Assembly (NCBI GenBank): GCA_950097015.1
Contig: CATNEN010000001.1
Coordinates: forward strand, 25,482,001 to 25,546,000
DNA length: 64,000 nt
Direction: 5' to 3'
DNA from: Macrostomum hystrix
Taxonomy: Eukaryota; Animalia; Platyhelminthes
Positions 30,414-62,058 of the stretch are shown one piece after another (position 1 is the stretch's first letter; each line of letters starts with the position of its first letter). Under the pieces are notes generated by a model. It was not told the DNA's origin. It made no database searches and saw nothing but the letters and a program-made list of their open reading frames with translations. The position numbers and the translations under genes were made by a program.

Positions 30414-33400
30414 ATGGCTGCTGGTGGCCCAAGCGATGACCAGGTGAGGGACTCAGAGAGCCAATCACAGTGCTCTTTCTATTGCTCAAATATTGACTGA
30501 ACTTGCCCACTGACTGTTGCATTGCCGACTCTCAGCTGCAGAGACTCGCCCAGCTGACCATCCAGGGCGACTATGGCCAGGTGCGCCAACTGGCGACGCG
30601 ACAGCGGGTAGCAAGCACAGATGGCAGCGGATGGACCATCTTGATGCTGGTGGCCGACGCTCCATATACTCCCGTGGAGGCTGAGAAGTGCGTATTGTAC
30701 TTATTTGAGTTGGACGCGGATCCGGCAGCGCGTGACGGGGCCGGCGACACGGCTGCGCACGTGGCAATCAGACGAAACCACCTGCGGCTGCTGGCGCTGC
30801 TGCCGTTCGATGCGAAGTGGCTGCAGAACGAGCGAGGCGCGACACCGCTGATGGAGGCAGCTCGGGCCGGCAGCTGGCGAACCGCGAAACACCTGCTGCA
30901 TCTGCTGAGGCAGAGGAGGTATAATGAGTATAAGAAGAGAGGCAACTCGAAGAGGGATCAGCTGCTCGGCCTGCAGGACAGCGAAGGTCGAACCGCGCTC
31001 GACCTGGCGAGGCAGGGCGGCCAGAGGCAGCTAGCCAGCTACATTGAGCGGTGAGTGATCAGTTCGCTGCTGTGCCCGATTCGCAGCATTGCAGCTGGGG
31101 TGGCCTGAGCATTGGTCGCAGCCCAGCCAATCAGAGCCAGTCAGCTGAAGCCGCTGTTGTTTGCATGGCCCAATGGGATTTCATTTCGGTGCAGTCGCTT
31201 TTGCATTTCTAGTTTAGCAACTCGAGCTAACTAATAAATCGATTGGAGGTCACTCAAATGGGAACTTGTCAATCTGGGAAAGCACTAGAGATGCAGGGGA
31301 ATTTTCTGCATGCAACTGAATTCCCCATGTGTTTGTGTCTCCCACGGCCAGTTTCCCTTCCCCAATACTTTGATTGGCTGGGATTTCACTTCCCTTAACT
31401 TGGAGATTCGCAAATAGGCAATCAGCAAATCTCCAATGGCCAGTGCCCAGATTTGTGTGCCACATTGGCAGCACTGAGAACTGGCATTTCTCATGCCGCA
31501 GTGCTTTCTCGACCCCAACACTTTGCTGATGCAGCGAATTTGAGGCTGAGTAAAAATGAGCTTGTCTGAAACTGCTGCCTGTTTGTGTGCGATGAGAATT
31601 TCGCATTTGATTTCTTCTGCTTTGCAGGGAGATGCGGCTGCGAGTGGATGAATTTGGCAGGATCTCCGGCCTGACAGCCTCGGTGAGTGGCATCTGGGGT
31701 GCCGATGTGGGTGCAGATGAGCAGCTGTGCTCAAATTCTCCACTCGCCTTTGCAGGAGGAGGCAGAGCGAGAGGAACTGGAGCGGCTGGCCGAGTCGGGC
31801 GACTCAGCGGGGCTGCGGCGAGCGGCGACCCGCGGCAACTGCGACCTGCCGGACAGGGTGGGTCAGACAGCGTTAATGCGGGCAGTTGAGAACATCCAGT
31901 GCTCTGACGGGGCTCTGTGGCAGCATCTGCTGCAGCTCGGGGACCCCACCTGTGCTGATGTGGGTGCTCGCAGTTGCCAGCACTGGGCAGCCGGGGCTGG
32001 CAATTCTGCCGCAGTCTCCCAGCTGCTCCATGCCGGAGCCTCCGCCAACACCAGGGGTTGGAGGGAATTCACGCCCCTCATGTGGGCAGCCGAGGCGCGC
32101 CCCGCCACCGCCGCCGCAGTCGGTCGGGCTCTGCTGGCCGCAGGGTCGGACTGGAGCCTGAAGGACGAAGATGGCAAGACTGCGCTGGATTTGGCCACAG
32201 AGGAGGGAAATAGCGAACTGGCCGAGCTGCTGCGTGGGTGAGTTGCCATGGCGACTGAGAATGTCTCTCATCTTGCATTATCGCACTGAGTGGGTGCAGG
32301 TCGCAGTGTTTCACTGATCGGAGTCAAAGTTGGTTGCAATTTTTAGCCAAAATATTTTCTGTCCAATCAGAGTTTTGCCCGCCTCTGCCACTCAAGCAGT
32401 TTTGCAGTGCCGTAAATAATAGCATTAATATTATCAGTGGGAATAAGGCTTTCCATTTGCTGCTTTTTATAGGTGAAAATGCGCACTGCGTACCGTGCGG
32501 GCCGCTCTGACAAAGCCCAATTTTCAGTGCGCAATTCAGAGTTTGTGCAGTCCGAAGCAACTTCTGCTTTCGACGCTGTGGAAATTGGGGCTTGTGAAAC
32601 GGCTGAGCATCGCTTCTGGAGGGGTGGGCGTGCGGGCGCTCTCCCATTGGCTGGCGGACTCCCCGCCACGTCTCTCCCATTGGCTGGGGGCCTCCGCCAG
32701 TCAGTTTTAGCGCTTCTGCGCCATTTCAGCCTAGCTGTTGCGCTGCTATTGCTGGAAAACTGACACAGCTGAGCTAAAATGCACAGTTTAGTCACAGTTT
32801 GCTGCTACTTGAACTGTTAATTGGCATTGGCATTAATTACTGCAGTGCCTTCAGCAAACACAAGCAAAGGACAGGACACACTCAGGACAAACACAAGTCA
32901 GCAATCAGACGCAGACTAAAGTGCATTGAATGAAAAACAGTCTGGCTGACTGTGGCTCACTTGGCGCAAGTGACGGCCTACAGGGTGGCTGTTAAGAAGA
33001 GGCCACCCACAGAGTGGGGGTCGAGGGCCGCACAGGCAAATGAAAATGTGCGGAGAGGCCCCCAGCGAAGGCAGGGACTGTGGAGTGGGGTGGGTGCCCC
33101 GCCTCTCTGCTCCCTCGTCACCTCTCTGCCCCCTCGGCACCTCGTCACCTCGCAGCCAGCGAGAGGCAATTCTGCCCATTTCGCTGACTCCTGAGCCAGA
33201 GACTTTTAGAAATAACAACTGGACCCGCAAGGCTTTCTTCTCCCCTGCAAGTTGAGGCCGGTTTTCGGCCAATCCTGTGAGCCAAAAAAGGACACAGGAT
33301 TTTCAGAATTTTGCTATTATTCCAAGTGGAAGCCTATTATCTTCGAATTTTCTTACTTTGAATTGACAAATTTTCGTAAACAAATTATTTGCATTTTTCT

Positions 33401-36400
33401 GGATCGCGAGATTTATTTTATTTTTTTTTATTAATGATACTTCTAATAGTGATTGATTAAATGAAAATAATACACCTAAATTAAGTTCTGCGCTTCAATT
33501 TACAATTACTTTACATTTAGAAATTGGGCATTGCAATACAAAGTAGCATTAAAATTGTCAAGCCGTGCTCAGGAGTATAAGGCAAGACTGCCCGTAGGCT
33601 TGGTTTGGGTTAGTAGCGAATTTAGTTTATTAGTCACGATGTATCACGATACACTTGCATATATATATAAGTAGACGAGTCAACAAGGCTTAAAAGTCAA
33701 CAGGTGTTGAGTACATCAATAATCAATATTCAGGCTGCGTACATTGGGTCAGAGTGCGGTTGGCGCGCAGGCCTGCAGATCTACCACAGTTCACTTGCTT
33801 AACACAGTTCACGGTTCATTCACGGCTCAAACCCCGGCACGTCATCTCCCCCCTTCGAACCGCTCGGGCGGCACGCCCCGATTCGCACGGAGGTTGTAGC
33901 TCGGTCTCTGGGGAGTCGCGGCCGGTGACGGCACTCTGCCACTGGCCGCTGGCGGCGGATCTGCGGTCTCCCCTGGCGCGCTTGCCTGGGTCAAGGACGC
34001 AGGCATGTTTTCATGTCGCGCTTCAGGCAAGTCAGCGGGTCTCGGAGCAACTTCGTGGCTGACTGCGGCTGTCGCAACGTCTCCATTGCCGCCGGCTTCG
34101 TGCCGACGCAGTTGGTCTAGGTAGGCGAGCGTGACCCGGTCACCCTGTCGCATGATCAGCGCCGTGTTGGACCCTTTCTGCGCCAGGAACTCCGCCTTCT
34201 CCGGTGTGGCACTCGGCGTTGGAGCGTACCAGACCTCAGAGCGGATCGCTGTCTTCATGGTGATGGGGTTTCGCAGCTGCCTTCCCATTAGTTGCGCCGG
34301 GCTGAACTCCCTTCCGGCGTGCGGTACACATCGGTAGTTCAGTAGGATCCGTGCGAGGAACGCGTCGTACGGCTCCTGCTGATCCCAGCCCGCCGAGGCC
34401 ACCTTGATTGTCTGCACCATTCGCTCGGCCAGGCCGTTGGACTGGGGATGATATGGTGGGGTTTTCACAGCGCGGCAGCCGATTTTGTGCAGCCAGCTCA
34501 CCAACCCCTCATCATGGAACTCTGCAGCATTGTCACTCACCAGGGTTCTCGGCACTCCGTTGCGGGCGAAGACCTCCTGGAGGACCCGCCTGACGGTGGC
34601 GGCGCTCTTGTCGGGCACTCGGATAGCCTCCGGCCAGGCAGACATGGCGTCGACCAGGATCAGCAGGAGCCCGACCTTCGGAACGTGAGCGTGGTCCATG
34701 TGCACGCGCCCCCAAGGCTCAGACTCGGCGGGCCATTGGTGGACACTGCTGTGACTACTTTGACGTTGCTTGGCGCAGGTGTGGCAGGCACGGACGAATC
34801 CTTCGACGTCACCGCAGTAGCCTGGCCACCAGACGGAGTTGCGGACCAGCGCTCGAGTGCTCGTGGCGCCCGGATGCGCCCCGCTGTGCACCAATTCCAG
34901 GACGCGACTGCGTAGTGAAGCAGGAATGACCGGGCGATCGCCGTAGCACACCACCGAGCCGTCTAGAGTGAGCGCATGTCGAATTGCTTTGAATTGCCGT
35001 TCCGCAGGCGAGCAACCCGACCAACGGTTTCCAGCTATCCTTCGAGTGATGTCCGCTAGCAGTCTATCGTGCTTTGTCTCCTCTGCCAGCTCAGTCCAGC
35101 CGATGACGCTTTCACCGGCCCAATGCACCAGGTGTTGTTGGGGTGCCGCCTCATATGGATCGTCCGGGACGTCAGCGAAGTCAAGACGAGACAACGCATC
35201 GGCGTGCGGGATGTCGACTCCGCGGGCGTACTCAATAGCGAAGTCAAATCCCATGAGGCGGATCGCCCAGCGCAGGATGCGGGCATTGGCGACTTTAGGG
35301 AGCTGCTGCCGTGCCCCGAACAGAAACTCGAGAGGGCGGTGGTCGGTTCGCAGAGTGAAGCGCTTGCCCAGTAGGAACTGACGGGACCTCTCCATTGACC
35401 ACACAATCGCCAGCGCCTCCCGTTCGATGTTGGAGTAGCGTGTCTCTGCCTCCGTCAATCGCCTGCTGAAGTAGATGACGGGATGACCTTCTTGCGTGAG
35501 CACGGTGGCCACCGCCTTCTCACTGGCGTCGGTCGTGAGCGTTGTTTCCTTTGTCCGGTCGTATGGCTGGATGATCGGGCTGGAGCTCAGGAGCTTCTTT
35601 AGCTGGTGGAAGGCCGCCTCCTGTGCAGTTGTCCAAGTGAACTCCACTCCCTTCTTGCGCAGCTGGTTCAGGGGCTCGACGATGTGCGCATAATTGTTGA
35701 CGAACCTTCCGAAGAAATTGCAGAGGCCGAGGAAGGACTCCAACTGGCGACGGTCGCGTGGTGCAGAGATTTCTTTGATCTTGCTGACCAGTCCAGGGTC
35801 CGGAGAGATTCCTTCTGCACCGATTCTGTAGCCGAGGAACTTGACGCTCTTGGCACCCAAGTTGGACTTGGCGAGATTTATGTTCATTCCGGCTGCCTGG
35901 AGGATCTTAATTACTTCATCGACTTTGGCTTTGAGATCTTCGCTGGAGCGACCTCCGAGCAGAATATCGTCTTGATAGATGACCTTGCCGTTCACCTCCT
36001 CAAGGGTAGTCTCCATGGCCTTTTGAAAGATGGCGGATGCTGACTTGAGGCCCGGCACGAGTCGGGTGTAGCGAAACAGACCGAGTGGGGTCGCAATCGT
36101 AGTGACTTCCCTGCTCTTCTCCTCGAGTTCAATCTGTAGATACGCGTCAGATAGGTCGAGGGTCGCGAAGTCAGTCATTCCGGCGACATCCGAGAAGATG
36201 GTCTCGACGGTTGGCATTGGATAGGTGTCTCCGCACACTTGATGATTGACCCCCGCCTTGTAATCGGCACAAATTCTGATGTTGCCGTTGGGTTTGAGGA
36301 CGCAGACGATTGGTGACGCCCACTCGCTACCGCCTTCGGTCACTGGTTCAATTATTCCTTCAGCCTGGAGGCGCTTCAGCTCTTGGTTGACGCGGTCGCG

Positions 36401-39400
36401 CAGGTGCAGCGGCACCGCTCTGGCTGCGCAGTAGAATGGCTTGGCACCTTCGATCAGCTTGATTCTGGCTTGGAAACCCTTCAGGCAATTGAGGTGCTGT
36501 ACTGCAGTGCCTTGGCCACCGACTGTCTGCCTCTCAGAGTTCCAATCCAGGTTGTCGAGGCCCAACAGCCCGTGTGACTTGTGTGCTGCAGTGACAACCA
36601 AGTCGACAGTGCGGAACTTGTCTTTATCATTCCACGTTGCTGTGAACTCGCCCAGGGTCTTGATTATGGATCCATCAAATTGCCTCAGGATTCGCTTGGA
36701 CTTCCTCAGCGCTGGACGCCCGAGCATCTCCCAGTGGCCCCTGGGAATGAGGCTTACGTCGGCGCCTGTATCCACTTGCATCTGCAGCTCTTTGCCGTTG
36801 ATCTTGACGCGCCGGAAGATGCCTTTTCGCTCCTTGTTCTCCGGTCTGATGACGAAGACGTTGGCGACATCTGGCTTCGGGGCGGCATCATCGTCCTCCT
36901 CCCAGGTCTCCAAGTGCACAGTGCGGGACCTGCAAACGGCTGCGTAGTGGTTTTTCTTGTTGCAGGTGGTGCACCTTTTGCCGAAGGCGGGGCATGAGCC
37001 CTGCTGGTGCGAACCGCCACAGTATTGGCACTTCGTCCTGGTTGTGTGCCTCGGCGATCTGGTGTCCGGAGGAAGCTGTGGAGGTGCGGCGCGCCGACCT
37101 GCATAGGCGATGCTTGACTCGGTGGTGACGGTGGGCCCGGTGCCGGCGTTGTAGTAGCGAATCTGCTCCAACTGCTCAAGCTCTTGCAGCACATCGGTCA
37201 GCAGCATGTCGATGCCCTGCATCCTCTCCAGCAGTCTGCGCTTGTGGTCCACGGAGGCAAGACCGTCCACGAGCCTCATGGTGATGAGTTCGTCCTCACA
37301 GGTCTGTTTCGAGCCTAGCTTCTCAAAACTGCACGAGGCAGCAGCTGCTCGGAGCCGGCGGTAGTACGATGCGACGCCTTCGCTCGGATCCTGCCTGAGG
37401 GAGAGGAATTTCACCCTCTCGGCAATGGTGAGGCGCCGCTTGGGCCGAATGGTTGCATCGATGATGTCGCGGATCTGTGCGAATGTTTTGGTCTCCAGGC
37501 TGTCTGGGGCAGCCATGAGGGTCAGGGTTCTCAGTGCCTTGAGGCCTGCCCTCGAGAGGAATAGATCAGTGATCTGGTGTTCCTCTTCCGAATCCTTCAG
37601 TTTCTTGGTCCGTGCAGCGGCCGCGAAACTGAGCAGCCAGGCTTCGGCTGTGTCTGGATCTTCCAGGTTTAGTTCAGATGCTTGCGATGCCATTGTCAAG
37701 CCGTGCTCAGGAGTATAAGGCAAGACTGCCCGTAGGCTTGGTTTGGGTTAGTAGCGAATTTAGTTTATTAGTCACGATGTATCACGATACACTTGCATAT
37801 ATATATAAGTAGACGAGTCAACAAGGCTTAAAAGTCAACAGGTGTTGAGTACATCAATAATCAATATTCAGGCTGCGTACATTGGGTCAGAGTGCGGTTG
37901 GCGCGCAGGCCTGCAGATCTACCACAGTTCACTTGCTTAACACAGTTCACGGTTCATTCACGGCTCAAACCCCGGCACGTCAAAAATATCAGTATTTAAC
38001 ACAAGTGTTGCTTATTTTCACTGTGAAACCTGTACAAGAAACCATCGCATCATAAGACATACAGAAAAAGTGAGTGGAAATGGAAAAACGACTATATTGT
38101 AGATTGAAGTAGCATAGAATAAAGAGCAATACAATGCACAAATGCGATTAACAATTATCAGCGCGCACCTTCACTTGTCAGTGCAGAGACCAGAAAGCTT
38201 GGCTACTTTTCTGCTTCTTGCAGCGCAACTCGCTGTTGACAAGTCCTTCGACAGGTTTTTCATCATGCAGTTAAAGAAGAACTTGACAACGCCGCCTTGA
38301 ATACAGTGGCCCTCTATGAAGATGTCGTCCTCCATAAGCTCGTCCACGAGATTGGTGAACAAGACCATCTGGTTGGAGGCGCTGAGCAGCTGGCCTCGCA
38401 GTCTTTCGCTCCTTCGAATCGCCTCAAAAACCTTCCAGCTGTGGCTCGCCAGGTTGAACACTACGTCAGTCGGCTTGGACAACCCGCCGCGGTTAATCTC
38501 GTCAATAAAGGCAGAGGCTGGATTGGAGCGTCTACTTCTAGCGGGGTCAGAACATCCGACTCGAGAAGAAGCTCCCGGCAGGACTCGCAGCCACGTCTGC
38601 TCTGCACCAGTTTCTTCGCAATGCAACCGCTCATGTAGTAGATGACGGTGTAGTCGGAGCCTTCGGGCTGAACAGTCAACTCCATCGTTGCCGCCATCTC
38701 CTGAGCCAGTCTCTTAATTCCAGAATCATGCTCGGGAGTCGACTCCGCGATCGCACGATCGATATCGCGGAGCGAAAACTGAGAAAATTTGAGCAAGCTA
38801 ATAGCTGTGATCTTTCGATTGTTCTCGGACAGCTGCCTGGCAGAAATGAAGTAGTTAGCTCCGGACATCTGGCGAAGCCACCCAAATCTGCGCTCGATGC
38901 TGTCAGACTGGAGGGCACCGAGCAGGATGTAGGAAAAGCCTTCGTGATCGAGCAGGTGTCTCGCGCAGGCAGCGATGGCTCGGCAGGTATTGCGACAGGC
39001 AAGGAAGGTCTCCTTGGACAAGCCGCGGTGGCCGGAGCTTTCCCAAGCCTGAATTTTTTTGAATTTTTTTAGACAATTTGCAGTGCAGTGAGCATATTCG
39101 CATATATTTCGTAGGCTGCAGGTCTTGATTGGGAATAGCTCTTTTTCCACTTTTCCAATAGGATTGGGTTCTTTAGTGGGAAAGAATGGAAAGTCACAAC
39201 TGCCGTTGCAGAGCATGCGTATCCACTTTTGCAGCCGACTGCAGAGCACTTGTTGACCATATTATTTGTATTTTAATGCAATTTATACTGAAATGATTGG
39301 GATAAAACAGGAACAGATATTGGGGATAAAAAGGCATTGGCAGATCCAGGAAAAGCTCACGCTTTTGTAGGCTGCAGTCAGAGACTTCTATAGATAACAA

Positions 39401-41478: not shown

Positions 41479-41570
41479 GACTTCTACAGTTGCTGCACGA
41501 AGCGAGACCGCAGGAGGAGAAAGTCCACGCTGGAGCTGCTAAGCCACGAGTTCCTGACGGGTAGGCAGCT
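41479..41570 (+). pseudogene. Duplicated fragment of the kinase C-terminus
   Basis: DFYSCCTKRDRRRRKSTLELLSHEFLTG is a near-copy of 41029-41111. Confidence 0.7.
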
Positions 41571-42599: not shown

Positions 42600-43090
42600 T
42601 TACAAGGATTAGCATGTCCTACAAGGATTAGCATGTCCTTCAAGGATTAGCATGTCCTACAAGGATTAGCATGTCCTACAAGGATTAGCATGTCCTTCAA
42701 GGATTAGCATGTCCTACAAGGATTAGCATGTCCTTCAAGGATTAGCATGTCTTAAAGGGATTAACATTTCCTTCAAAGATTAGCATGTCCTACAAGGATT
42801 AGCATGTCCTTCAAGGATTAGCATGTCCTACAAGGATTAGCATGTCCTTCAAGGATTAGCATGTCCTACAAGGATTAGCATGTCCTTCAAGGATTAGCAT
42901 GTCCTACAAGGATTAGCATGTCCTACAAGGATTAGCATGTCCTACAAGGATTAGCATGTCCTACTAGGATTAGCATGTCCTACAAGGATTAGCATGTCCT
43001 ACAAGGATTAGCATGTCCTTCAAGGATTAACATGTCCTTCAAGGATTAGCATGTCTCAAAGGGATTAGCATGTCTTATAAGGATTAGCGA
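42600..43090. repeat. 19-bp minisatellite GGATTAGCATGTCCTACAA
   Basis: About 25 units; the downstream flank 43090-43720 duplicates 5322-5960. Confidence 0.92.
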
Positions 43091-52148: not shown

Positions 52149-53475
52149 AATAAGGGCAAACAAGCTGACACTACACATACATATACATTAACATATACAT
52201 TTAGATTTACAATTTACACATCACTCAACTGATATGTATTAGGTCTCTGAAATCATTCAACTTTTCTTTCTTAAATTCTTGTGATTGTGATGATGCTTCC
52301 GTTAATGCTGTTTCTTAACTTTTGCACATGGTAGACATGTCTAGGTGCCCATTGTCTAGATTGGTCATTGCTTAGAGTAATATGATTGCTTTTCCAGTCC
52401 TAAATTATATAACCATTTTTTTGCTATTGCTTAAGTTTATTTGTGTTGATTGAGTTTTAACATCCTCAAGTTAATATTATCTGGCACATTATCTAATATC
52501 TTGCAAGTTCTTACAGGCCTAAAACATGTATAAAGATAGACTTGTCCCAACCTTGGCCATAGCAGGGGTGTAGTTATCAGGGAATACAGGGACATTGTGA
52601 CGAGTGTTTAGTTAGTTGTTGTGTAGCGGATTTGAGTTGGGATTTTAAATATATTGCTTTTTAAGTTAGTTTGTTTAACTAGCTGTGACGTGGTAACGGG
52701 TGGGGACGGCGACGGCAACACTGAAAACATGCTTATTATTATAACAACAGAAAGTACTAATTGGGTGTTGAATAAATTTGGTGCAATAATACCCAAGTGT
52801 ACACTTAGGAAATAAGCCAATCAGAATATAGGGTCAAGGTCAGAGCCAAGTTCTACTTTCTAGTCACAGAATAAAGTGATTATTGCGCAAAAAGTGAATG
52901 AAGAGTGAAGTGCGAAAACCAAAATAGTGTACCATACATAATATACCGGATACTGTATTGTTATAAGAAATTATAAGAAATTATAAGAAAAGTAAGAAAG
53001 TAAGTATTTACAATAATTATACGGCTGCGAAAAAACAAACTGCCACAATATATTCTCCCATTTGTCTGCTTAAACAGTTGCCCATTATATAAGTTAAAGT
53101 TTACTGATTTTTATCGCCGTATTTTCATGTTTCTTTGACAGTATTTAGCATGTTTTACAAATGTAGAGTATGAATTAATGTACTAATGTACTAAACTTGA
53201 GTATGTATGAATTCGCTAATAATGCAGTTATAATTTATATTTAAATATTTCCCACAGCTGCAGCATGCGCTCCACTCTACTGCCCTGTGAGTAGCCACCA
53301 AGGAGCACGATTCGAGAGCACTCCAAGGAGAGAGCGGCAGACACTGGCCTGCCCGTTGTCATGGCAACAATTTCAGGCATAAAAGCAGTCTCCGAGCTGC
53401 AGCGGGCCAGAGGTGGAATCGCTGTGTGCTCACCTTGAGCAGTGCTCAATATAACTTTTCACTCTAATCAGTCCC

Positions 53476-56400
53476 ATGGCTGCTGGAGGCCCAAGCGATG
53501 ACCAGGTGAGGGACTCAGAGCCAATCACAGTGCTCAAATATTGACTGAACTTGCCCACTGACAGTTGCATTGCCGACTCTCAGCTGCAGAGACTCGCCCA
53601 GCTGACCATCCAGGGCGACTATGGCCAGGTGCACCAACTGGCGACGCGACAGCTGGTGGCAAGCACAGATGGCAGCGGAAGGACCATCTTGATGCTGGTG
53701 GCCGACGCTCCAGATACTCCCGTGCAGGCTGAGAAGTGCGTATTGTACTTATTTGAGTTGGGCGCGGATCCGGGAGCGCGTGACGGGGTGGGTGACACGG
53801 CAGCGCACGTGGCAGCCAGACGGAACCACCTGCGGCTGCTGGCGCTGCTGCCGTTCGATGCGAAGTGGCTGCAGAACGAGCGAGGCGCGACACCGCTGAT
53901 GGAGGCAGCTCGGGCCGGCAGCTGGCGATCCGCGAAACACCTGCTGCATCTGCTGAGGCAGAGGAGGTATAATGAGTATGAGGAGAGAGGCAACTCGAAG
54001 AGGGATCAGCTGCTCGGCCTGCAGGACAGCGAAGGTCGAACCGCGCTCGACCTGGCGAGGCAGGGCGGCCACTCAGAGCTGGCCAGCGACATTGAGCGGT
54101 GAGTGATCAGTTCGCTGCTGTGCCCGATTCGCAGCATTGCAGCTGGGGTGGCCTGAGCATTGGTCTCAGCCCAGCCAATCAGAGCCAGTCAGCTGAAGCC
54201 GCTGTTGTTTGCATGGCCCAATGGGATTTCATTTCGGTGCAGTCGCTTTTGCATTTCTAGTTTAGCAACTCGAGCTAACTAATAAATCGATTGGAGATCA
54301 CTCAAATGGGAACTTGTCAATCTGGGAAAGCATTAGAGATGCAGGGGAATTTTCTGCATGCAACTGAATTCCCCATGTGTTTATGTCTCCCACAGCCAGT
54401 TTCCCTTCCCCAATATTCTGATTGGCTGGGATTTCACTTCCCTTAACTTGGAGATTCGCAAATACGCAATCAGCAAATCTCCAATGGCCAGTGCCCAGAT
54501 TTGTGTGCCACATTGGCAGCACTGAGAACTGGCATTTCTCATGCCGCAGTGCTTTCTCGACCCCAACACTTTGCTGATGCAGCGAATTTGAGGCTGAGTA
54601 AAAATGAGCTTGTCTGAAACTGCTGCCTGTTTGTGTGCGATGAGAATTTCGCATTTGATTTCTTCTGCTTTGCAGGGAGATGCGGCTGCGACTGGGTGTA
54701 AATGGCGACATCTCCGGCCTGACAGACTCGGTGAGTGGCATCTGGGGTGCCGATGTGGGTGCAGATTGTAGTGTGCGTACGCACGTGAGCCAGGCCCAGG
54801 TGTACACCTGGGTCGTTTGATTGGTTGCGGAGCGGGGTGGGTGTCGCCACCCCAGTTCTAGCAAATAATATATGGACGCGCGCTCAGCGTGGCAGTAAAG
54901 ATTGAGAGTTTTGTCTGCTCACTAAAAATAGCCTCGGCCTTAGTTATTACAATGGCATCGCAAGCACCGAACCCCTAGTGCACCATGACTGAGCAAATTT
55001 CTCTCGCGCCTCCCGGCCAGTTTGTTATCGATAGCGATTGCCACTCAACTGCACAGCGCTGGACTGCATGGGCTCGCCGGTTCGCCACATACATTAACGC
55101 AGCTGGGATCCATGACGCAAAGCGAGGGCAGCACCTGCTGTTGTACGCCGCGGGAGAGGAGCTGCAGACCATCGTCGAAGAGAATGAAATTGACGCTGGG
55201 GAAGACTACAGCAGCCTCGCAAAGAATATCCAGGAATTCTGGGACGGCAAGAACAGCATCGTGTTCCTCCGCTTCAAGTTCGAGACCTGCAGACAACAGC
55301 AAGGCGAGACAATCGACCAGTGGTACCAGCGCCTGCGCAAGGCGGCGGAGCCGTGCGAGTTTGGAGCGATCAAGGACTCGCTGATCCGAGACAAAATCGT
55401 CGCCTACTGTGACTCCGAGAGGCTGAGGAGAGACTTCCTACAGAGCAAAGACATCACCCTGACAGATGTGCTGAGGAAGGCGAGAGCCAAAGAAGCGGCG
55501 GAGCAGCAGGCCAGCGCGATGGAGAACGGCAGGCCAGGTGAGCCGCAGCAGCAACTCGCAGCCATCCGGAGAGCCGAGCAGCCACCAGGGCCGCAGGTGC
55601 GCTGCAATCGGTGCGGCAGGCCAGGGCACTCCACGTGCGCCGCAGCGCAAGGCAAGAGCTGCAGAAAGTGCGGAAAGCCAGGCCACTTCGCCCGAGCTTG
55701 CAGGTCCAGGCAGGAGGCGCCCCAAAGCAATTCAAATGCTGTCGCGATGGTGCAAGGTGAGACCAGCTACGAGAGGGTGGACGACCCGGACACCGGCATA
55801 TTCAAGGTCGACCAGGAGGAGCAATCCGCCCACACAGTAGCTGAGATCAACGGCACCAGACTGTCAGTGCTGATCGACAGCGGGGCGGCTCGCAATGTGA
55901 TCAACCGCGCAACGTTTGAGAGCCTTAAACAGCGGCCGCGTCTGCAAGCAGCCTCTGACAGGTTGTTCGCGTATGGCTCGGACCGGCCGATGCAACTCAT
56001 CGGCAAGGCGGCGATGTCCATCCGCTTATTCGGCCGACGGGCGGTCGCCACGTTTCACGTTGTCGAAGGCAGAGGCATCACCATCATCGGCAGGCAGACG
56101 GCCACTCAAATGGAAATCCTGCGGATCGGACCACCACCGACGGTCGATCATCAGGTGCTGCAGGTCGCGGAAGCGGAGGCGGCTGTCGACAGCCTCCTCG
56201 GCAACACGAGATCCAGTGGAATGCCCCAAGATGCCCTTGGCAGGATACTGCGCAAGTACTCCAGCGTGCTCAGCGGCATCGGCTGCTTCACCGGGCCGCC
56301 AGTCAGCATCCACCTGACCGACAACGCCCGACCGGTTTGTCACGCACCGTCTAAGGTACCGATTCACCTGGCCGAGGCAGTGGACAAGGAGCTGCAGCTA

Positions 56401-59400
56401 CTGGAGCAGCTCGGAATCATCGAGCCCGTCGACGGACCAGTTCCGTGGGTCGCGCGGATGGTCGTTGTGCCCAAGAAGGAGCCAGGCGAAGTGCGGATCA
56501 CACAGGACCTCCGCGATGTCAATCGCTATGTCATCCGCGAGCGTCACCAGATTCCGACTTTTGAAGAGGTGACGGGAGACATGGCCGGCAGCACCGTCTT
56601 CTCGGAACTGGACATCGCGAAGGCGTTCTACCAGGTGCCTGTAGCAGAAGAATGCCGCAATCTGCTGACATTCTCGACACCCCGAGGACTTCGGCGTCTC
56701 ACTCGGCTGTGCATGGGCCTGTCCACCTCACAGGAGATCCTACAGAGCGTGATGTGCAGAGTGCTGGCAGGCCTGCCCAACGTAAAATGGATCCACGACG
56801 ACGTGGTCGTGTTCGGCCGCACGATGGCGGAGCACAACAGCAGCCTCGAGGCCTGCCTGGCCCGCCTGGCGCAACACGGCATCACGCTAAATGCTCGAAA
56901 ATGCAGGTTGGCACGCAGCAGCATTGAGTTTATGGGAATGCGACTGACGGCCGAAGGAGTCCAAGCCACAGAAAGCAAGGTCGCCGCCGTTCAAGAATTC
57001 AAGGAGCCAGAGACGATAAGCCAACTTCGATCGTTCTTGGGCCTCGTGAATTATCTCGCGGTATTCACGCCACAGTTGGCCAAGGTGGCGGAGCCGCTGC
57101 GACGCCTGACCCGGAAGAACACCGACTGGCAGTGGGGCGCCGACCAGGCCAGCGCCTTTGCGCAGCTAAAGCGCAGTATTGCGGAGCCGACAACGCTGGC
57201 ATTCTACGACAAGCGGCTACGGACACAGCTGATTGTGGACGCGGGACCAACCGGACTCGGCGCAATCCTGGCGCAAGTACAGCACGACGGCAGTTCGCGG
57301 CCAGTCGCATACGCGAGCCGGACCCTCTCCGACGTAGAGCGGCGATATTCGCAGACCGAAAAAGAGGCGCTCGCCGTGAAGTTCGGCTGCCTGAAGTTTG
57401 AGTACTACTTGTATGGATCGCCCGAATTCACGGTGATCTCCGACCACAAGCCGCTGACAGCCATGTATGCGCCAGGGTCACGGCCGCCTCCACGAGTCGA
57501 GCGTATGGCGCTGCGTATCCAGCACCTGGTATTCAAGGTCGAATACCAGCCAGGAGCGTCCAATGCTGCAGACATACTCAGCAGGCAGCCTCTAAACGCT
57601 GAAGGAAGTAGGACCAGCGAGCAGCTGAGAGAGGCCTACATAAACGAGGTAGCGCAGGCGGCTGTCCCGAAGGCGCTCACGCTCGAAGACATCCGCAAGA
57701 GCTCAGCCAGCGACCCAGTTATCCGGGCAGCGATAGCAGCGATGCAAGGCGGCCAATGGGACCGCTCTAGCGCTGAGATGCGGTCACTCCACGCGCTGCG
57801 AGAGGAGCTGTCGGCGGTAGACGGAGTTCTTCTTCGGCATCAGCGGATTGTCGTGCCAGCAGCTCTACGGCAGCAGATGCTCGAGCTGGCGCACCAAGGA
57901 CACCAGTGCTCGCAGAAGACGACCGCAAGGCTCAGCAGCAAGGTCTGGTGGCCGAGAATGGCAACACAAGCGCAGGAGTTCGTCAGTCGGTGCCGCAGCT
58001 GTGCCATCACGTCTCACACGCCAGCCGTCCGGGCTACGCCTCTACAGCCGACGCCTATCCCTAAGGGCGCCTGGTTGTCGATTGGGGCTGACTTTGTAGG
58101 CCCGATCAACAACAACATGCTGCTGGTGTGCGTGGACAGATACTCGAGATTCCCAGAGGTGCAGCTCATGCAGACAACGACGGCCGAGGCACTGGTCCCG
58201 CGCCTGCGAGAAATTTTCGCGCGATTTGGCATCCCGCAGGAGCTCGTAACTGACAACGGGCCGCCATTTTCATCCAAGGAGTTTGGCCGTTTCCTAGAAA
58301 GCTACGGCATCAAGCACCGCCTCATCACGCCTTACTACCCAGCCGCCAACGGCATGACAGAGCGGCTGAACCGCTCAATCAACAAGGTCGTGCGGGCGGC
58401 AATCGAGGAGCGGCGCGACTGGAGGGCTGCTCTGGACGAGTGGCTGCTGGCATACAGGAACACGCCGCACACAGCCACGGGCCGCGCGCCAGCCGAGCTG
58501 CTAATGGGCCGGCGACCAAATGATGTCATCCCCGCCGCCCGGCCATCCCAGCGCGTCCGCATCAACGAGCAGCGGCTGCGAGAGATGGATGCGAGCGCCA
58601 AGGCCGCGATGAAGCAGCGAGCGGACGCCAGGAGGCGGCCACGGCGGCACGAAATCCAGGTCGGCGATTCGGTGCTGCGACGGCGAGTCGGTGCCAGCAA
58701 GACGCAAACGCCATTCGAGAGCGGCGCCTGGACAGTCCAGCGGGTGGCCGGCAACTCGCTGATGCTGCGTCGTGACGGCGCGGCCTGCTGGCGGCATTGC
58801 ACAGCGGTCAAGGTCGTCACCCCAGAATCAGACGACGCTGGTGCCAGGCCGCAGGCTGCCGCGCCAGAAACTCCAGGCGAGGCGGCGCGGAACCCGGCCG
58901 AATCCCCGGTGGCGCTGCGCCCGCACCCCCGCGCTGCACGGGGTGGCGTGAAGATCTACAAGGACTAAACCAAGGACTGAAAACGAACTGACTTTTCTAC
59001 TGACATTAACAATCACATGCACGCTTTTCTTTGCAAGTCCGATGCGACTATCAATTCGAGTGTTTTATTTCCTCCAATAGCTGCATATTTTTTTTCGGTC
59101 GAGTTCCTTTTCGTTCTTTTCGACATCTTGCTTCTCGAATTCGTTCTTTTTTTGTCTCCCCACAGTTTCTGTTCGAAGGGGGAGAGATGTAGTGTGCGTA
59201 CGCACGTGAGCCAGGCCCAGGTGTACACCTGGGTCGTTTGATTGGTTGCGGAGCGGGGTGGGTGTCGCCACCCCAGTTCTAGCAAATAATATATGGACGC
59301 GCGCTCAGCGTGGCAGTAAAGATTGAGAGTTTTGTCTGCTCACTAAAAATAGCCTCGGCCTTAGTTATTACACAGATGAGCAGCTGTGCTCAAATTCTCC

Positions 59401-62058
59401 ACTCGCCTTTGCAGGAGAAGGCAGAGCGAGAGGAACTGGAGCGGCTGGCCAGGGCGGGCGACTCGGCGGGGCTGCGGCGAGCGGCGACCCGCGGCAACTG
59501 CGACCTGCCGAACAGGGTGGGTCAGACAGCGTTAATGCGGGCAGTTGAGAACATCCAGTGCGCTGACGGGGCTCTGTGGCAGCATCTGCATCAGCTCGGG
59601 GACCCCACCTGTGCTGGTGTGTATGCTCACAGTAGCCTGCACAGGGCAGCCGGGACTGGCAATTCTGCCGCAGTCTCCCAGCTGCTCCATGCCGGAGCCT
59701 CCGCCAACACCAGGGATTGTATTGAATTCACTCCCCTCATGTGCGCAGCCTGGTTTGCACCCCCCGCCACCGCTGCCGCAGTCGGTCGGGCTCTGCTGGC
59801 CGCAGGGTCGGACTGGAGCCTGAAGAACAAAGATGGCAAGACTGCACTGGATTTGGCCACAGAGAATAGACAGAGCGAACTGGCCGAGCTGCTGCGTGGG
59901 TGAGTTGCCATGGCGACTGAGAATGTCTCTCATCTTGCATTATCGCACTGAGTGGGTGCAGGTCGCAGTGTTTCACTGATCAGAGTCAAAGTGGGTTGCA
60001 ATTTTAGCCAAAATATTTTCTGTCCAATCAGAGTTTTGCCCGCCTCTGCCACTCAAGCAGTTTTGCAGTGCCGTAAATAATAGCATTAATATTATCAGTG
60101 GGAATAAAGCTTTCCATTTGCTGCTTTTTATAGGTGAAAATGCGCACTGCGTACCGTGCGGGCCGCTCTGACAAAGCCCAATTTTCAGTGCGCAATTCAG
60201 AGTTTGTGCAGTCCGAAGCAACTTCTGCTTTCGACGCTGTGGAAATTGGGGCTTGTGAAACGGCTGAGCATCGCTTCTGGAGGGGTGGGCGTGCGGGCGC
60301 TCTCCCATTGGCTGGCGGACTCCCCGCCACGTCTCTCCCATTGGCTGGGGGCCTCCGCCAGTCAGTTTTAGCGCTTCTGCGCCATTTCAGCCTAGCTGTT
60401 GCGCTGCTATTGCTGGAAAACTGACACAGCTGAGCTAAAATGCACAGTTTAGTCACAGTTTGCTGCTACTTGAACTGTTAATTGGCATTGGCATTAATTA
60501 CTGCAGTGCCTTCAGCAAACACAAGCAAAGGACAGGACACACTCAGGACAAACACAAGTCAGCAATCAGACGCAGACTAAAGTGCATTGAATGAAAAACA
60601 GTCTGGCTGACTGTGGCTCACTTGGCGCAAGTGACGGCCTACAGGGTGGCTGTTAAGAAGAGGCCACCCACAGAGTGGGGGTCGAGGGCCGCACAGGCAA
60701 ATGAAAATGTGCGGAGAGGCCCCCAGCGAAGGCAGGGACTGTGGAGTGGGGTGGGTGGCGCCGCCTCTCTGCCCCCTCGCCACCTCTCTGCCCCTCTGTC
60801 CCTTTAACCGCAGTTTCGCACAGGGCAGACAGGATGCTGAAATTTCAGTGTCTAACGCATGCAGCACAGCAGGGGTCCACTGTTCTCATGCAGAATGCTG
60901 CAGATTCACTGCCTCATCTGCCTCATATTATACAAATTACTCGTTGACAATCTCCATTTCCACTAACCAATGCCCATGCAGGTACGAAGGCAAGGAGTAC
61001 TTTGAAATACCACCACCGTGAGTACATACATTGCTGCTGCTTTTGTTGCATTTCTGCTCTCTGCAATCTGCAGCTCTTCTGCCCACCTGCCGCTTGCTTT
61101 CATCAGCCACTTCAACTTCCTCAGGCTGCTTATTGAACGTTGGGATTCCGTCAAGCTCATCGGCAGGGGAGGCTTCGGCGATGTCCACGAAGTGCTCACG
61201 GACACGGGCATCAGGTGCGCTGCGAAGACTCTCAGACTGCCAGTGCAGCTCGGCGACCTGGAGCCTTCAAAGAGAAAGGTGATCGACAAGTTTATTGAAG
61301 GCGAGAAGAACCTGTGCCAGCTGCGGCACCCCAACATCGTCAGCTTCTTGCACATCGCTCAGCCTGAGTATGCGACAGTTGTTGTGTTCATGGAGCTGCT
61401 GGATGGCTGCAGCCTGGAGAGATTTCTCGACTCCAAGCCGCTGGGCGAAGAAGCCATTCGAGAGTTCAGCGAGCAGGTGAAATTTGAGCAGCCTGCTCAT
61501 GAGTGATGCAGTGAGTTGACTTTTTAGCGTCAGCCGACACCAGTTCCTCAACCCACGCACCTGCAGATCTGCAGCGCGCTGCACTACCTGCACAGCCGAC
61601 AGCCGCCCGTGATCCACAGAGACATCAACTGCAGCAACATCATTGTGCTCAGTGACAACAGGCGAGTCAAGCTGATCGACTTCGGCCTGTCAATCAAGCT
61701 GGAGCAGTCTGTCAGCCACCTCACAGCCTCCACTGCCACACCGAAGGGCACTCTGAACTTCATGGCGCCAGAGCTGCTGGCACCAGACGATGAAGGCCAC
61801 CCGCGGTACAGCAGAGAGTCGGACATCTGGGCGTTCGGCTGCTCAGTCTTCCAGATGGCCACTGGAGGCAGGCCCTACTCAAACTGCAGACACTTTGTCT
61901 ACGTGGCTCAGAAGCTGGAGAAGGACGGAGCCCCCGCCCTGCCTGCCGGCTGCTCGGCGGAGCTGCGGGACTTCTACAGCCGCTGCACCGCCCGAGACCG
62001 CAAGGAGAGAAAGTCAGCAGAGGAGCTGTGCCTTCACGGCTTCCTGCTGCGACGGTGA
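53476..62058 (+). CDS. Ankyrin-repeat + Ser/Thr protein kinase, copy 2 (~654 aa); exons 53476-53505, 53584-54098, 54676-54730, 59415-59899, 60982-61017, 61125-61476, 61567-62058
   Basis: Same exon structure as copy 1; GT-AG introns; 1965-nt open frame; all indels versus copy 1 are in frame. Confidence 0.82.
53584..54098 (+). CDS. Ankyrin-repeat exon 2 of ANK-kinase copy 2
   Basis: Ankyrin motifs and splice sites. Confidence 0.85.
54767..59372 (+). mobile_element. Full-length Ty3/Gypsy (Mag-like) LTR retrotransposon 2, in intron 3 of copy 2
   Basis: 185-bp LTRs at 54767-54951 and 59188-59372, identical by eye; 5-bp TSD CAGAT; PBS-like TGGCATCGCAAGCA; PPT GAAGGGGGAGAGA; the empty site is in the copy 1 intron 31683-31755. 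Confidence 0.95.
54985..58968 (+). CDS. Gag-Pol polyprotein (1327 aa)
   Basis: CNRCGRPGH/CRKCGKPGHFARAC, IDSGA, IHDD, VDAG...EKEAL, HQGH...CRSC, VTDNG, ANGMTER. Confidence 0.93.
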   Translation: MTEQISLAPPGQFVIDSDCHSTAQRWTAWARRFATYINAAGIHDAKRGQHLLLYAAGEELQTIVEENEIDAGEDYSSLAKNIQEFWDGKNSIVFLRFKFETCRQQQGETIDQWYQRLRKAAEPCEFGAIKDSLIRDKIVAYCDSERLRRDFLQSKDITLTDVLRKARAKEAAEQQASAMENGRPGEPQQQLAAIRRAEQPPGPQVRCNRCGRPGHSTCAAAQGKSCRKCGKPGHFARACRSRQEAPQSNSNAVAMVQGETSYERVDDPDTGIFKVDQEEQSAHTVAEINGTRLSVLIDSGAARNVINRATFESLKQRPRLQAASDRLFAYGSDRPMQLIGKAAMSIRLFGRRAVATFHVVEGRGITIIGRQTATQMEILRIGPPPTVDHQVLQVAEAEAAVDSLLGNTRSSGMPQDALGRILRKYSSVLSGIGCFTGPPVSIHLTDNARPVCHAPSKVPIHLAEAVDKELQLLEQLGIIEPVDGPVPWVARMVVVPKKEPGEVRITQDLRDVNRYVIRERHQIPTFEEVTGDMAGSTVFSELDIAKAFYQVPVAEECRNLLTFSTPRGLRRLTRLCMGLSTSQEILQSVMCRVLAGLPNVKWIHDDVVVFGRTMAEHNSSLEACLARLAQHGITLNARKCRLARSSIEFMGMRLTAEGVQATESKVAAVQEFKEPETISQLRSFLGLVNYLAVFTPQLAKVAEPLRRLTRKNTDWQWGADQASAFAQLKRSIAEPTTLAFYDKRLRTQLIVDAGPTGLGAILAQVQHDGSSRPVAYASRTLSDVERRYSQTEKEALAVKFGCLKFEYYLYGSPEFTVISDHKPLTAMYAPGSRPPPRVERMALRIQHLVFKVEYQPGASNAADILSRQPLNAEGSRTSEQLREAYINEVAQAAVPKALTLEDIRKSSASDPVIRAAIAAMQGGQWDRSSAEMRSLHALREELSAVDGVLLRHQRIVVPAALRQQMLELAHQGHQCSQKTTARLSSKVWWPRMATQAQEFVSRCRSCAITSHTPAVRATPLQPTPIPKGAWLSIGADFVGPINNNMLLVCVDRYSRFPEVQLMQTTTAEALVPRLREIFARFGIPQELVTDNGPPFSSKEFGRFLESYGIKHRLITPYYPAANGMTERLNRSINKVVRAAIEERRDWRAALDEWLLAYRNTPHTATGRAPAELLMGRRPNDVIPAARPSQRVRINEQRLREMDASAKAAMKQRADARRRPRRHEIQVGDSVLRRRVGASKTQTPFESGAWTVQRVAGNSLMLRRDGAACWRHCTAVKVVTPESDDAGARPQAAAPETPGEAARNPAESPVALRPHPRAARGGVKIYKD
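59415..59899 (+). CDS. Ankyrin-repeat exon 4 of ANK-kinase copy 2
   Basis: Ankyrin motifs and splice sites. Confidence 0.85.
61125..62058 (+). CDS. Ser/Thr kinase domain exons of copy 2 (intron 61477-61566)
   Basis: Canonical kinase subdomains. Confidence 0.9.

What the first reader, a model, noticed from the sequence alone, without database searches (positions are those of the whole stretch)
30414..62058. Tandem ankyrin-kinase paralogues with hypervariable ankyrin binding surfaces: candidate diversifying immune/recognition receptor-kinase system
Seen: two intact 7-exon ANK+kinase genes. In exon 4 (31756-32237 vs 59415-59899) I count by hand about 24 amino-acid-changing codons plus a one-codon indel, against about 5 silent changes. 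The next ~850 bp of intron differs at only about 4 positions. The changes cluster: LA[ES/RA]G, A[DVGAR/GVYAH]S[CQ/SL]H[W/R]AAG[A/T], TR[GWR/DCI]EFTPLM[W/C]AA[EAR/WFAP], K[DE/NK]DGKTALDLATE[EGN/NRQ]. Established: the beta-hairpin and first-helix positions form the ankyrin target-binding surface (the ones randomised in DARPins), and the scaffold residues are conserved here. Inference: positive selection or conversion among many paralogues is diversifying a cytosolic sensor fused to a MAP3K-like signalling domain. This would be analogous to repeat-domain NLR-type receptors but without a NOD domain.
Basis: partly seen in the sequence, partly recalled or inferred. Interest (0 to 1): 0.85.

Follow-up and report, generated by a model that had tools for sequence, protein, structure and literature searches.

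The report
Hypervariable ankyrin-kinase gene family in flatworm
Two neighbouring flatworm (Macrostomum) genes belong to a family of at least 30 genes joining ankyrin repeats to a protein kinase, and the family changes fast almost only at the residues ankyrin repeats use to grip partners, the evolutionary pattern of an immune-type recognition receptor, here on a domain build not described in animals.

Summary
Both copies are intact 7-exon GT-AG genes of 667 and 654 aa. Each encodes about ten ankyrin repeats followed by an STE-like kinase with all catalytic motifs.

- **A versus B:** exon 4 differs at 24 amino-acid-changing codons, one codon indel and 5 silent codons. The next 780 bp of intron differ at 4 positions.
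- **Family:** the genome holds at least 17 close and 15 distant paralogues.
- **Selection:** across 15 intact close paralogues, exon 4 has omega 2.8 overall. M2a beats M1a by LRT 314, with 21% of sites at omega about 13. The framework, the introns (2% divergence) and the kinase (omega 0.47) stay conserved.
- **Location of sites:** all 28 selected sites lie in hairpin loops or the first helix of the five repeats. Of these, 25 sit at ankyrin positions 33/1/2/3/5/10/13/14.
- **Expression:** RNA contigs join exon 4 to exons 5 and 6.
- **Effector variation:** two close paralogues have caspase exons downstream and no kinase exon. M. lignano has ankyrin-kinase-caspase proteins.

The immune function is inferred, not shown. 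This scan noted similar hypervariable ankyrin arrays elsewhere in this genome (s1-845646, s1-849751, s1-849762).

The parts
30414..41160 (+). Copy A, ankyrin-kinase gene of 7 exons (30414-30443, 30536-31050, 31628-31682, 31756-32237, 40042-40074, 40182-40536, 40627-41160), 667 aa
   Evidence: Open spliced frame with GT-AG introns. Pfam finds Ank and Pkinase. The model is collinear with M. lignano A0A1I8GU44.
53476..62058 (+). Copy B, ankyrin-kinase gene of 7 exons (53476-53505, 53584-54098, 54676-54730, 59415-59899, 60982-61017, 61125-61476, 61567-62058), 654 aa
   Evidence: Open spliced frame. RNA contigs match 61993-62100 with no differences, and intron 6 (61477-61566) is spliced out.
31756..32237 (+). 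Copy A exon 4: five ankyrin repeats forming the hypervariable module
   Evidence: M0 omega 2.77 and M2a LRT 314. The AlphaFold2 model has pLDDT 94.4 and five helix pairs.
59415..59899 (+). Copy B exon 4: the same hypervariable module, with one extra codon
31780..31794 (+). Selected codons in repeat 1, helix 1 (exon-4 residues 9 and 13)
   Evidence: NEB P>0.95.
31855..31890 (+). Selected codons in repeat 2 (residues 34, 35, 37, 42, 45), at ankyrin positions 2, 3, 5, 10, 13
31957..31998 (+). Selected codons in repeat 3 (residues 68, 70, 72, 77, 80, 81), at positions 1, 3, 5, 10, 13, 14
32050..32094 (+). Selected codons in repeat 4 (residues 99, 101-103, 110, 113, plus the indel site), at positions 32, 1, 2, 3, 10, 13, 14
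   Evidence: The register was fixed by HMMER alignment to a DARPin.
32164..32211 (+). Selected codons in repeat 5 (residues 137-139, 141, 146, 149, 150, 152), at positions 1, 2, 3, 5, 10, 13, 14, 16
31628..31682 (+). Exon 3, an 18-aa linker with a small variable patch (A versus B: Nd 8.8, Sd 0.2)
32238..33132 (+). Start of intron 4, nearly identical between A and B and 1-4% divergent among nine paralogues. Used as the neutral yardstick.
40182..41160 (+). Kinase exons 6-7 of A. Motifs GRGGFG, AAK, HRD(INCSN), DFG and APE are all present.
   Evidence: Eleven paralogues give omega 0.47.
33554..37982 (-). LTR retrotransposon in intron 4 of A. Its 291-bp LTRs are 100% identical, and the gag-pol ORF spans 33842-37723. 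It is nested in a terminal-inverted-repeat element (arms 33191-33233 and 39509-39551) that carries a transposase-like ORF at 38461-39249.
   Evidence: Observation only.
54767..59372 (+). A different LTR retrotransposon in intron 3 of B. Its 185-bp LTRs are 100% identical, and the gag-pol ORF spans 54985-58968.
   Evidence: Observation only.

Best explanation
Copies A and B are two expressed members of a Macrostomum-specific, tandemly expanded family of proteins with no signal peptide or transmembrane stretch seen by eye in the translated models (no predictor was run), so probably cytosolic. Each protein joins about ten ankyrin repeats to a catalytically intact STE-like protein kinase.

Shown: the last five repeats (exon 4) form a variable recognition module. 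Their framework, the flanking introns and the kinase are kept nearly identical among paralogues. About 28 residues on the hairpin tips and the exposed face of helix 1, which form the ankyrin ligand-binding surface, are driven apart by strong positive selection. Ankyrin and kinase exons sit on one transcript.

Inferred: each paralogue binds a different protein ligand, or a different variant of one. Binding either activates the adjacent kinase or brings the ligand to it as a substrate. Close paralogues appear to couple the same variable module to a caspase instead. The whole therefore works like a germline-encoded repertoire of intracellular sensors wired directly to signalling or cell-death effectors, most plausibly against fast-evolving non-self such as viruses, microbes or selfish elements. 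It has no NOD/NACHT oligomerisation domain.
For: - **Gene models and domains:** both genes are intact with Ank and Pkinase domains.
- **Family size:** at least 17 close (78-92% aa) and 15 distant paralogues, mostly on contig 1 at 22-27 Mb.
- **Site models on 15 intact exon-4 copies:** M0 omega 2.77, from my own GY94 code, which reproduces the IQ-TREE likelihood of -2530.90. M1a gives -2466.49 and M2a gives -2309.52. The LRT is 314, with 21% of sites at omega 13.
- **Tree-free check:** seven independent sister pairs give pN/pS 1.97, Fisher p 4e-5.
- **Neutral yardstick, nine paralogues:** intron 4 divergence is 0.0225, framework pS 0.029 and framework pN 0.023. Hypervariable codons have pN 0.34.
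- **Hypervariable residues:** 12-26 of 28 differ between genes whose introns differ by 1-3%.
- **Structure:** AlphaFold2 gives pLDDT 94.4 and five helix pairs. All 28 selected sites are in loops or helix 1, none in helix 2.
- **Register:** alignment to a DARPin places the selected sites at positions 1, 2, 3, 5, 10, 13 and 14. This gives 25 of 28 on the binding set, p 6e-13.
- **Residue composition:** selected sites are enriched in Trp, Arg, Glu, Asp, Lys and Tyr. Distinct codons there almost always encode distinct residues.
- **Controls:** exon 2 omega is 0.58 and the kinase omega is 0.47, with catalytic motifs kept in 11 paralogues.
- **RNA:** contigs join exon 4, exon 5 and exon 6 and splice out intron 6.
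- **Caspase link:** caspase exons lie downstream of close ankyrin paralogues that lack a kinase exon. M. lignano has an ankyrin-kinase-caspase protein, PAA47029.
- **Literature:** platyhelminth ANK-caspases and an M. lignano caspase with a kinase pro-domain are published (PMC11463336).
Against: - No ligand, induction or phenotype data exist, so 'immune' rests on analogy.
- A versus B alone does not give a significant nonsynonymous excess over synonymous changes.
- Site-model tests assume a single tree. Here 57% of informative site pairs are incompatible and Rm is at least 19, so the LRT magnitude is inflated to an unknown degree.
- RNA contigs carry paralogue-like differences and do not cover the hypervariable part of exon 4 at 97% likeness or better. 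Expression of A itself is therefore not shown, and that of B only at its 3' end.
- The link between ankyrin exons and caspase exons in paralogues rests on coordinates only.
- The genome still has at least 11 NACHT-domain loci, so this family does not replace a missing NLR set.
Confidence: 0.6

Rival explanations
1. The variable ankyrin surface tracks fast-evolving endogenous partners rather than pathogens. Examples would be proteins involved in sexual conflict or sperm-egg-soma interactions in these hermaphrodites, or intragenomic conflict with selfish elements. The kinase would then act as a substrate-targeted enzyme.
For: The positive selection and family expansion are equally expected under sexual or genomic conflict. 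The loci are full of very young transposon insertions. The transcripts are present in RNA contigs from runs with no treatment on record.
Against: The proteins are cytosolic and not secreted (from the sequence). Sister genes carry caspase effectors, which fits defence or cell death better than reproduction. No tissue data either way.
Confidence: 0.22
2. The pattern comes mainly from concerted evolution. Frequent gene conversion homogenises framework and introns, while short patches escape or are shuffled among paralogues. Point-mutation positive selection would then be much weaker than omega 13 suggests.
For: Different segments have different nearest relatives. Intron 4 of A is closest to B (0.011), but the kinase region of A is closest to the genes at 26.29 and 26.16 Mb (0.024-0.026, against 0.038 to B). 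Many A or B variants at hypervariable codons recur in other paralogues. Of informative site pairs, 57% are incompatible and Rm is 19. Synonymous divergence in exon 4 exceeds intron divergence between A and B (p 0.004-0.03).
Against: The PHI test is not significant (p 0.10). Conversion alone cannot create an excess of nonsynonymous over synonymous differences (independent pairs, p 4e-5). Nor can it place the differences on the binding surface (p 6e-13). Keeping patches diverse against homogenisation itself needs diversifying selection.
Confidence: 0.1
3. A targeted mutational process (programmed hypermutation of the patches) generates the variation, without selection for change.
For: Differences are tightly clustered, often with several bases per codon. 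pS at hypervariable codons (0.075) is higher than in the framework (0.029).
Against: At hypervariable codons, distinct codons almost always encode distinct residues, and pN is 4.5 times pS. No template repeat or reverse-transcriptase partner is associated with the exon. The retroelements in the introns differ between A and B and are recent insertions.
Confidence: 0.03
4. Relaxed constraint or decaying duplicates: the ankyrin exon is drifting because the copies are redundant.
For: One of 16 close copies (L016) has a frameshift in exon 4, and one kinase exon 6 (L034) is also frameshifted.
Against: Omega well above 1 cannot arise from relaxation. Fifteen of 16 exon-4 copies are intact, the framework has pN about equal to pS at only 2%, and the kinase is under purifying selection.
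Confidence: 0.02

Closest known systems
Fungal NLRs with ankyrin, TPR or WD40 repeat sensors under diversifying selection (Dyrka et al. 2014, PMC4986451)
   Same: An intracellular repeat-domain sensor with a conserved scaffold and positively selected binding positions. Both form expanded families with modular effector domains.
   Different: There is no NACHT/NB-ARC domain here. Variation is between paralogous genes, not between near-identical repeats inside one gene. The effector is a C-terminal kinase (or caspase) joined directly to the repeats. The host is an animal, not a fungus.
Platyhelminth ANK-caspases and the M. lignano caspase with a kinase pro-domain (PMC11463336)
   Same: Same phylum and evidently the same superfamily. 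Close paralogues of A and B have caspase exons downstream, and M. lignano PAA47029 is ankyrin-kinase-caspase.
   Different: A and B have no caspase domain. In the passages I read by keyword search, the paper calls ANK-caspases unique to parasitic flatworms and does not mention hypervariability or an ankyrin-kinase family.
DARPins (designed ankyrin repeat binders)
   Same: The naturally selected positions include five of the six positions randomised in DARPin libraries (2, 3, 5, 13, 14) in repeats 4 and 5, with an invariant scaffold.
   Different: These are natural genes that also vary at positions 1 and 10, and they are fused to an enzyme.
Animal ankyrin-plus-kinase proteins: ILK, TNNI3K (N-terminal ankyrin) and RIPK4/ANKK1, DAPK1 (C-terminal ankyrin)
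   Same: An ankyrin array and a kinase on one chain. ILK and TNNI3K share the N-ankyrin, C-kinase order (from my own knowledge of these families).
   Different: Those are single-copy conserved genes of the TKL or CAMK groups. Here the kinase C-lobe is closest to STE kinases (MKK7, MAP2K5, ASK1, TNIK, WNK, PAK). The gene is a multi-copy, fast-evolving family.
Expanded substrate-recognition families under positive selection (nematode F-box/MATH-BTB, teleost finTRIM B30.2; PMC2657112 for finTRIM)
   Same: A conserved effector-coupling part plus a positively selected recognition domain, in lineage-specific tandem expansions.
   Different: The fold and the effector differ: ubiquitin ligase adaptors there, a kinase or caspase here.

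Membership tests
Ankyrin-repeat proteins | Tandem 33-residue helix-loop-helix repeats recognised by Pfam Ank models | tested here: met
   Ank_2 E = 5e-17 for exon 2 and for exon 4. The AlphaFold2 model of exon 4 has five helix pairs at pLDDT 94. The best PDB matches are DARPins and ankyrin-1.
Eukaryotic protein kinases, catalytically competent | Pkinase domain with Gly-loop, VAIK Lys, alphaC Glu, HRD, DFG and APE | tested here: met
   Pkinase E = 8e-28. GRGGFG, AAK, HRDINCSN, DFG and APE are read in both translations and kept in 11 paralogues.
STE-group MAP3K (for example ASK1) | Kinase domain closer to MAP3Ks than to other kinase groups | tested here: inconclusive
   The C-lobe's best hit is MKK7 (6e-24), followed by WNK, TNIK and ASK1 (about 1e-19). 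For the M. lignano homologue, MAP2K5 scores 4e-26 and ASK1 5e-26. The N-lobe alone matches nothing specific. The kinase is STE-like, subfamily unresolved.
NOD-like receptors (NLR) | Central NACHT or NB-ARC NTPase domain | tested here: not met
   The 667-aa model is fully taken up by ankyrin repeats, short linkers and the kinase. The genome's 13 NACHT matches all lie elsewhere.
Platyhelminth ANK-caspases | Caspase (Peptidase_C14) domain on the same chain as the ankyrin pro-domain | tested here: not met
   No PF00656 match falls inside the window, contig 1 25482001-25546000. Neighbouring paralogues have matches at 25453227-25453993 and 25480118-25481118.
ILK / TNNI3K type ankyrin-kinases | N-terminal ankyrin array plus a TKL-group (pseudo)kinase, single conserved orthologue | tested here: not met
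   The domain order is the same. However, neither ILK nor TNNI3K is among the 60 best solved-structure matches of the kinase, and the gene is multi-copy.
Gene family under diversifying selection on a binding surface | dN/dS above 1 at a subset of sites, and those sites cluster on the known interaction surface | tested here: met
Innate immune receptor | Binds a non-self ligand, with induction by or protection against infection | not testable with these tools
   No challenge RNA-seq, ligand or knock-down data were available.

The most novel reading that the evidence does not exclude
Macrostomum flatworms have a previously undescribed class of animal intracellular immune receptors. A germline repertoire of DARPin-like variable ankyrin sensors is fused directly, with no NOD domain, to interchangeable effectors: an STE-like kinase, a caspase, or both. 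New specificities arise by positive selection and possibly by patch exchange among tandem paralogues.
Probability: 0.35. Interest if true: 0.85.

Novelty: new variant of a known kind. Interest (0 to 1): 0.72.

Why it matters
Little is known about how flatworms recognise pathogens. Most animal intracellular sensors described so far use LRR or WD40 repeats attached to a NOD domain. Here the signature of a recognition repertoire is unusually clean. The scaffold, the introns and the enzyme are frozen, while about 28 surface residues evolve roughly 15 times faster than neutral DNA.

The build is ankyrin repeats fused to a kinase, and caspase versions appear to sit next door. If the family is a sensor system, it shows a new way to wire variable recognition straight to signalling or cell death. 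It would also link to the unexplained ANK-caspases of parasitic flatworms. M. lignano supports RNAi and transgenesis, so the idea can be tested directly. The natural variants also map which ankyrin positions tolerate diversification, including positions 1 and 10, which are not among the six that DARPin libraries randomise.

Tried and rejected
- **A versus B alone:** the nonsynonymous excess over synonymous changes is not significant (Fisher p 0.11-0.24). The case rests on the intron comparison and on the family.
- **Recombination:** the PHI test is not significant (p 0.10). The four-gamete count is high (Rm 19). I could not separate recurrent mutation from short-tract exchange. GARD, GENECONV, codeml and HyPhy are not installed. 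I wrote M0/M1a/M2a myself and did not run M7/M8 or BEB.
- **Paralogue gene models:** I wanted the full models of the paralogues that lack a kinase exon. The ankyrin-to-caspase link therefore rests on coordinates only, and I did not try another tool for those letters.
- Exons were searched one by one by reference. Joining was done only inside local scripts, to check the frame and compute dN/dS.
- **The search for homologous proteins:** not used, because its length window would exclude full-length relatives of single exons.
- **RNA coverage:** contigs did not cover the hypervariable part of exon 4 at 97% likeness or better. Copy-specific expression of the variable region is not shown.
- **Kinase N-lobe (exon 6):** it gave no informative solved-structure match.
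- **Literature:** searches found no paper on hypervariable ankyrin kinases in flatworms. Absence from this library is not proof.
Full report
**1. What is in the sequence**

The window is a repeat-rich eukaryotic stretch with many minisatellites. Earlier notes of this scan identify the genome as a Macrostomum flatworm. I checked this indirectly. The closest public proteins are all from Macrostomum lignano, at about 70% identity.

A self-comparison shows a rearranged segmental duplication. Segment 29132-31718 matches 52175-54766 at 95.6%. Segment 31714-33132 matches 59373-60794 at 96.7%. Segment 39986-41075 matches 60926-62015 at 96.3%. The gaps between matching blocks are transposon insertions:
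- An LTR retroelement at 33554-37982, with 291-bp LTRs that are 100% identical, sits in intron 4 of copy A. It is nested in a terminal-inverted-repeat element.
- A different LTR element at 54767-59372, with 185-bp LTRs that are 100% identical, sits in intron 3 of copy B.

I only describe these elements.

**2. Gene models**

Exons 6 and 7 are a protein kinase. Exons 3 and 5 are short linkers.

The kinase keeps the Gly-loop, the AAK lysine, HRD, DFG and APE. Its C-lobe is closest to STE-group kinases: MKK7 at 6e-24, then WNK, TNIK, ASK1 and PAK. For the M. lignano homologue, MAP2K5 and ASK1 tie at about 5e-26. 'MAP3K-like' is therefore only approximately right.

The M. lignano protein A0A1I8GU44 (671 aa) is collinear with the model. 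Exon 2 matches residues 22-192, exon 4 matches 212-372, and the kinase matches 381-653. This is independent support for the exon structure.

By eye I see no signal peptide or transmembrane stretch in the translation, so a cytosolic location is inferred.

**3.

A and B differ in exon 4 at 24 amino-acid-changing codons, one codon indel and five silent codons. Nei-Gojobori gives dN 0.091, dS 0.045 and a ratio of 2.0. The first 780 bp of intron 4 carry four differences. Exon versus intron density differs at p = 6e-12.

For this pair alone the nonsynonymous-to-synonymous excess is not significant (p 0.11-0.24). A two-gene comparison could not have settled the matter.

**4. The family**

Six-frame searches of the whole assembly found 36 matches to exon 4, 49 to kinase exon 7 and 39 to exon 2. 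By coordinates these pair up into at least 17 close paralogues (78-92% aa), mostly on contig 1 between 22 and 27 Mb. At least 15 more distant ones also exist.

Fifteen of the 16 closest exon-4 copies are intact. A nucleotide alignment shows near-identity in introns and scaffold codons. The differences are packed into short patches.

**5. Selection**

On the 15 intact copies, a single-ratio codon model gives omega 2.77. My implementation reproduces the IQ-TREE GY+F3X4 likelihood of -2530.90. M1a gives -2466.49 and M2a gives -2309.52. The LRT is 314, with 21% of sites at omega about 13.

The data are reticulate: 57% of informative site pairs are incompatible, Rm is 19 and PHI p is 0.10. I therefore added two tree-free checks:
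- Seven phylogenetically independent sister pairs give pN/pS 1.97, Fisher p 4e-5.
- Among nine paralogues with alignable intron 4, intron divergence is 0.0225, framework pS is 0.029 and framework pN is 0.023. Codons with three or more residues have pN 0.34. The whole exon has pN 0.102 against pS 0.037.

Genes whose introns differ by 1-3% differ at 12-26 of the 28 selected residues.

Two controls were run the same way. Exon 2 gives omega 0.58, with a few selected sites (LRT 33). Kinase exons 6-7 give omega 0.47, with 78% of sites near 0.05 (LRT 27).

**6. Where the selected sites are**

AlphaFold2 on exon 4 with 28 paralogues gives pLDDT 94.4 and five helix pairs. All 28 sites with posterior above 0.95 lie in the loops before helix 1 or on helix 1 in an i, i+3, i+4 pattern. 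None is in an outer helix.

A HMMER alignment to a DARPin fixes the register. In repeats 4 and 5 the sites fall at positions 1, 2, 3, 5, 10, 13 and 14. This includes five of the six positions randomised in DARPin libraries.

Overall, 25 of 28 sites fall in the set 33/1/2/3/5/10/13/14, against 24% expected (p 6e-13). The sites are rich in Trp, Arg, Glu, Asp, Lys and Tyr. Distinct codons at these sites almost always mean distinct residues. This argues for selection on the protein rather than a mutation hotspot.

**7. Expression and splicing**

Four public runs, available only as contigs, were laid on B 59300-62100 at 97% likeness or better.
- Exons have contig depth 50-160, against 3-7 in introns.
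- Intron 6 is removed in all four runs at the predicted GT-AG.
- One 399-nt contig carries the last 16 nt of exon 4, then exon 5, then exon 6. Ankyrin and kinase parts are therefore on one RNA.
- That contig has paralogue-like letters, so it shows the family's splicing rather than B's own.
- Contigs match B's 3' end (61993-62100) without any difference.
- The hypervariable part of exon 4 is not covered at this stringency.

**8. Effector variation**

Close paralogues with exon 4 at contig 1 25442412 and 25473952 have no kinase exon nearby. They do have caspase-domain exons 6-11 kb downstream on the same strand, at 25453227-25453993 and 25480118-25481118. Their first 900 nt of intron 4 are still 1.3-3.7% from A and B. 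Several distant members likewise have caspase exons after the ankyrin or kinase exons.

In M. lignano, PAA47029 (1060 aa) is ankyrin-kinase-caspase. A 2024 paper describes platyhelminth ANK-caspases and an M. lignano caspase with a kinase pro-domain (PMC11463336). In the passages I read it mentions neither hypervariability nor an ankyrin-kinase family.

Co-transcription of ankyrin and caspase exons there is inferred only.

**9. Interpretation**

Shown:
- an expressed, expanded family;
- a variable ankyrin binding surface under strong positive selection;
- a conserved active-looking kinase.

Inferred:
- each paralogue recognises a different ligand and couples that to phosphorylation, or to proteolysis in the caspase-bearing relatives;
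- the most likely targets are fast-evolving non-self molecules.

The main rival is a role in endogenous conflict, either reproductive or with selfish elements. Segment-wise nearest neighbours differ and variants are shared among paralogues. Exchange among paralogues probably contributes, but it cannot by itself explain the nonsynonymous excess or its placement on the surface.

The genome has at least 11 NACHT loci elsewhere. This family is an addition to NLR-type genes, not a replacement for them.

**10. Novelty**

I found no paper on this family's hypervariability. The closest concepts are fungal ankyrin/TPR/WD40 NLRs under diversifying selection (PMC4986451), finTRIM-type expansions (PMC2657112) and DARPins.

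The same scan has flagged related hypervariable ankyrin arrays elsewhere in this genome (s1-845646). It has also flagged two of the paralogues that I used here (s1-849751, s1-849762).

I rate this a new variant of a known kind. The evolutionary signature is strong and the function is untested.

Noticed in passing
window 33554-37982 and 54767-59372: Two different LTR retrotransposons with 100% identical LTRs (291 bp and 185 bp) sit in introns of copies A and B. Each has an uninterrupted gag-pol ORF of about 1300 aa, so both are very recent insertions. RNA contigs end at the 59372/59373 boundary with depth 85-147.
   Followed up: partly
window 33191-33233 / 39509-39551, ORF 38461-39249 (-): A 43-nt inverted-repeat pair (91% complementary) brackets the whole 6.3-kb insertion in intron 4 of A. 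It includes a 262-aa ORF that looks transposase-like by eye, so a DNA transposon probably hosts the nested LTR element. No Pfam check was made.
   Followed up: no
window 9096-11430 versus 16176-18531: A 2.3-kb inverted duplication at 96% identity flanks about 5 kb. It includes 10-bp-period minisatellites and its nature is unknown.
   Followed up: no
window 4530-6213, 20514-22686 versus 42720-46577, 47015-49895: Further blocks of the same segmental duplication (92-97% identity) lie upstream of both genes. The duplicated unit is therefore much larger than the genes and has been rearranged.
   Followed up: no
window 50612-52261: About 30 copies of a 54-bp minisatellite at 98-100% identity lie just upstream of copy B's duplicated block. 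Many other 10-26-bp-period arrays occur at 87-730, 921-1900, 2557-3700, 4809-7730, 10480-12186, 16076-17096 and 21488-22400.
   Followed up: no
window 41479-41613: A 46-aa stretch 70% identical to the C-terminal tail of A's exon 7 lies 320 bp downstream of A's stop codon. A and B have non-homologous 3' ends after 41075/62015. Two tail types exist in the family, homologous over the first 161 or over 172-177 residues of exon 7.
   Followed up: partly
contig 1 25453227-25453993 and 25480118-25481118 (outside the window, 0.9-29 kb before its start): Caspase-domain exons lie downstream of two close ankyrin paralogues that lack a kinase exon. This suggests an effector swap between near-identical sensor modules.
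   Followed up: partly
L016 (contig 1 24533763-24534246) and L034 (contig 1 about 23929700): One close paralogue has a frameshift in exon 4 and another has a frameshift in kinase exon 6. These are probably pseudogenes within the family.
   Followed up: partly
L011 (contig 1 25571645-25572148): This paralogue carries an in-frame 24-nt insertion (8 aa, SDWEEANT-like) in the hairpin of repeat 4. It appears to duplicate the neighbouring loop sequence, so loop length varies as well as sequence.
   Followed up: no
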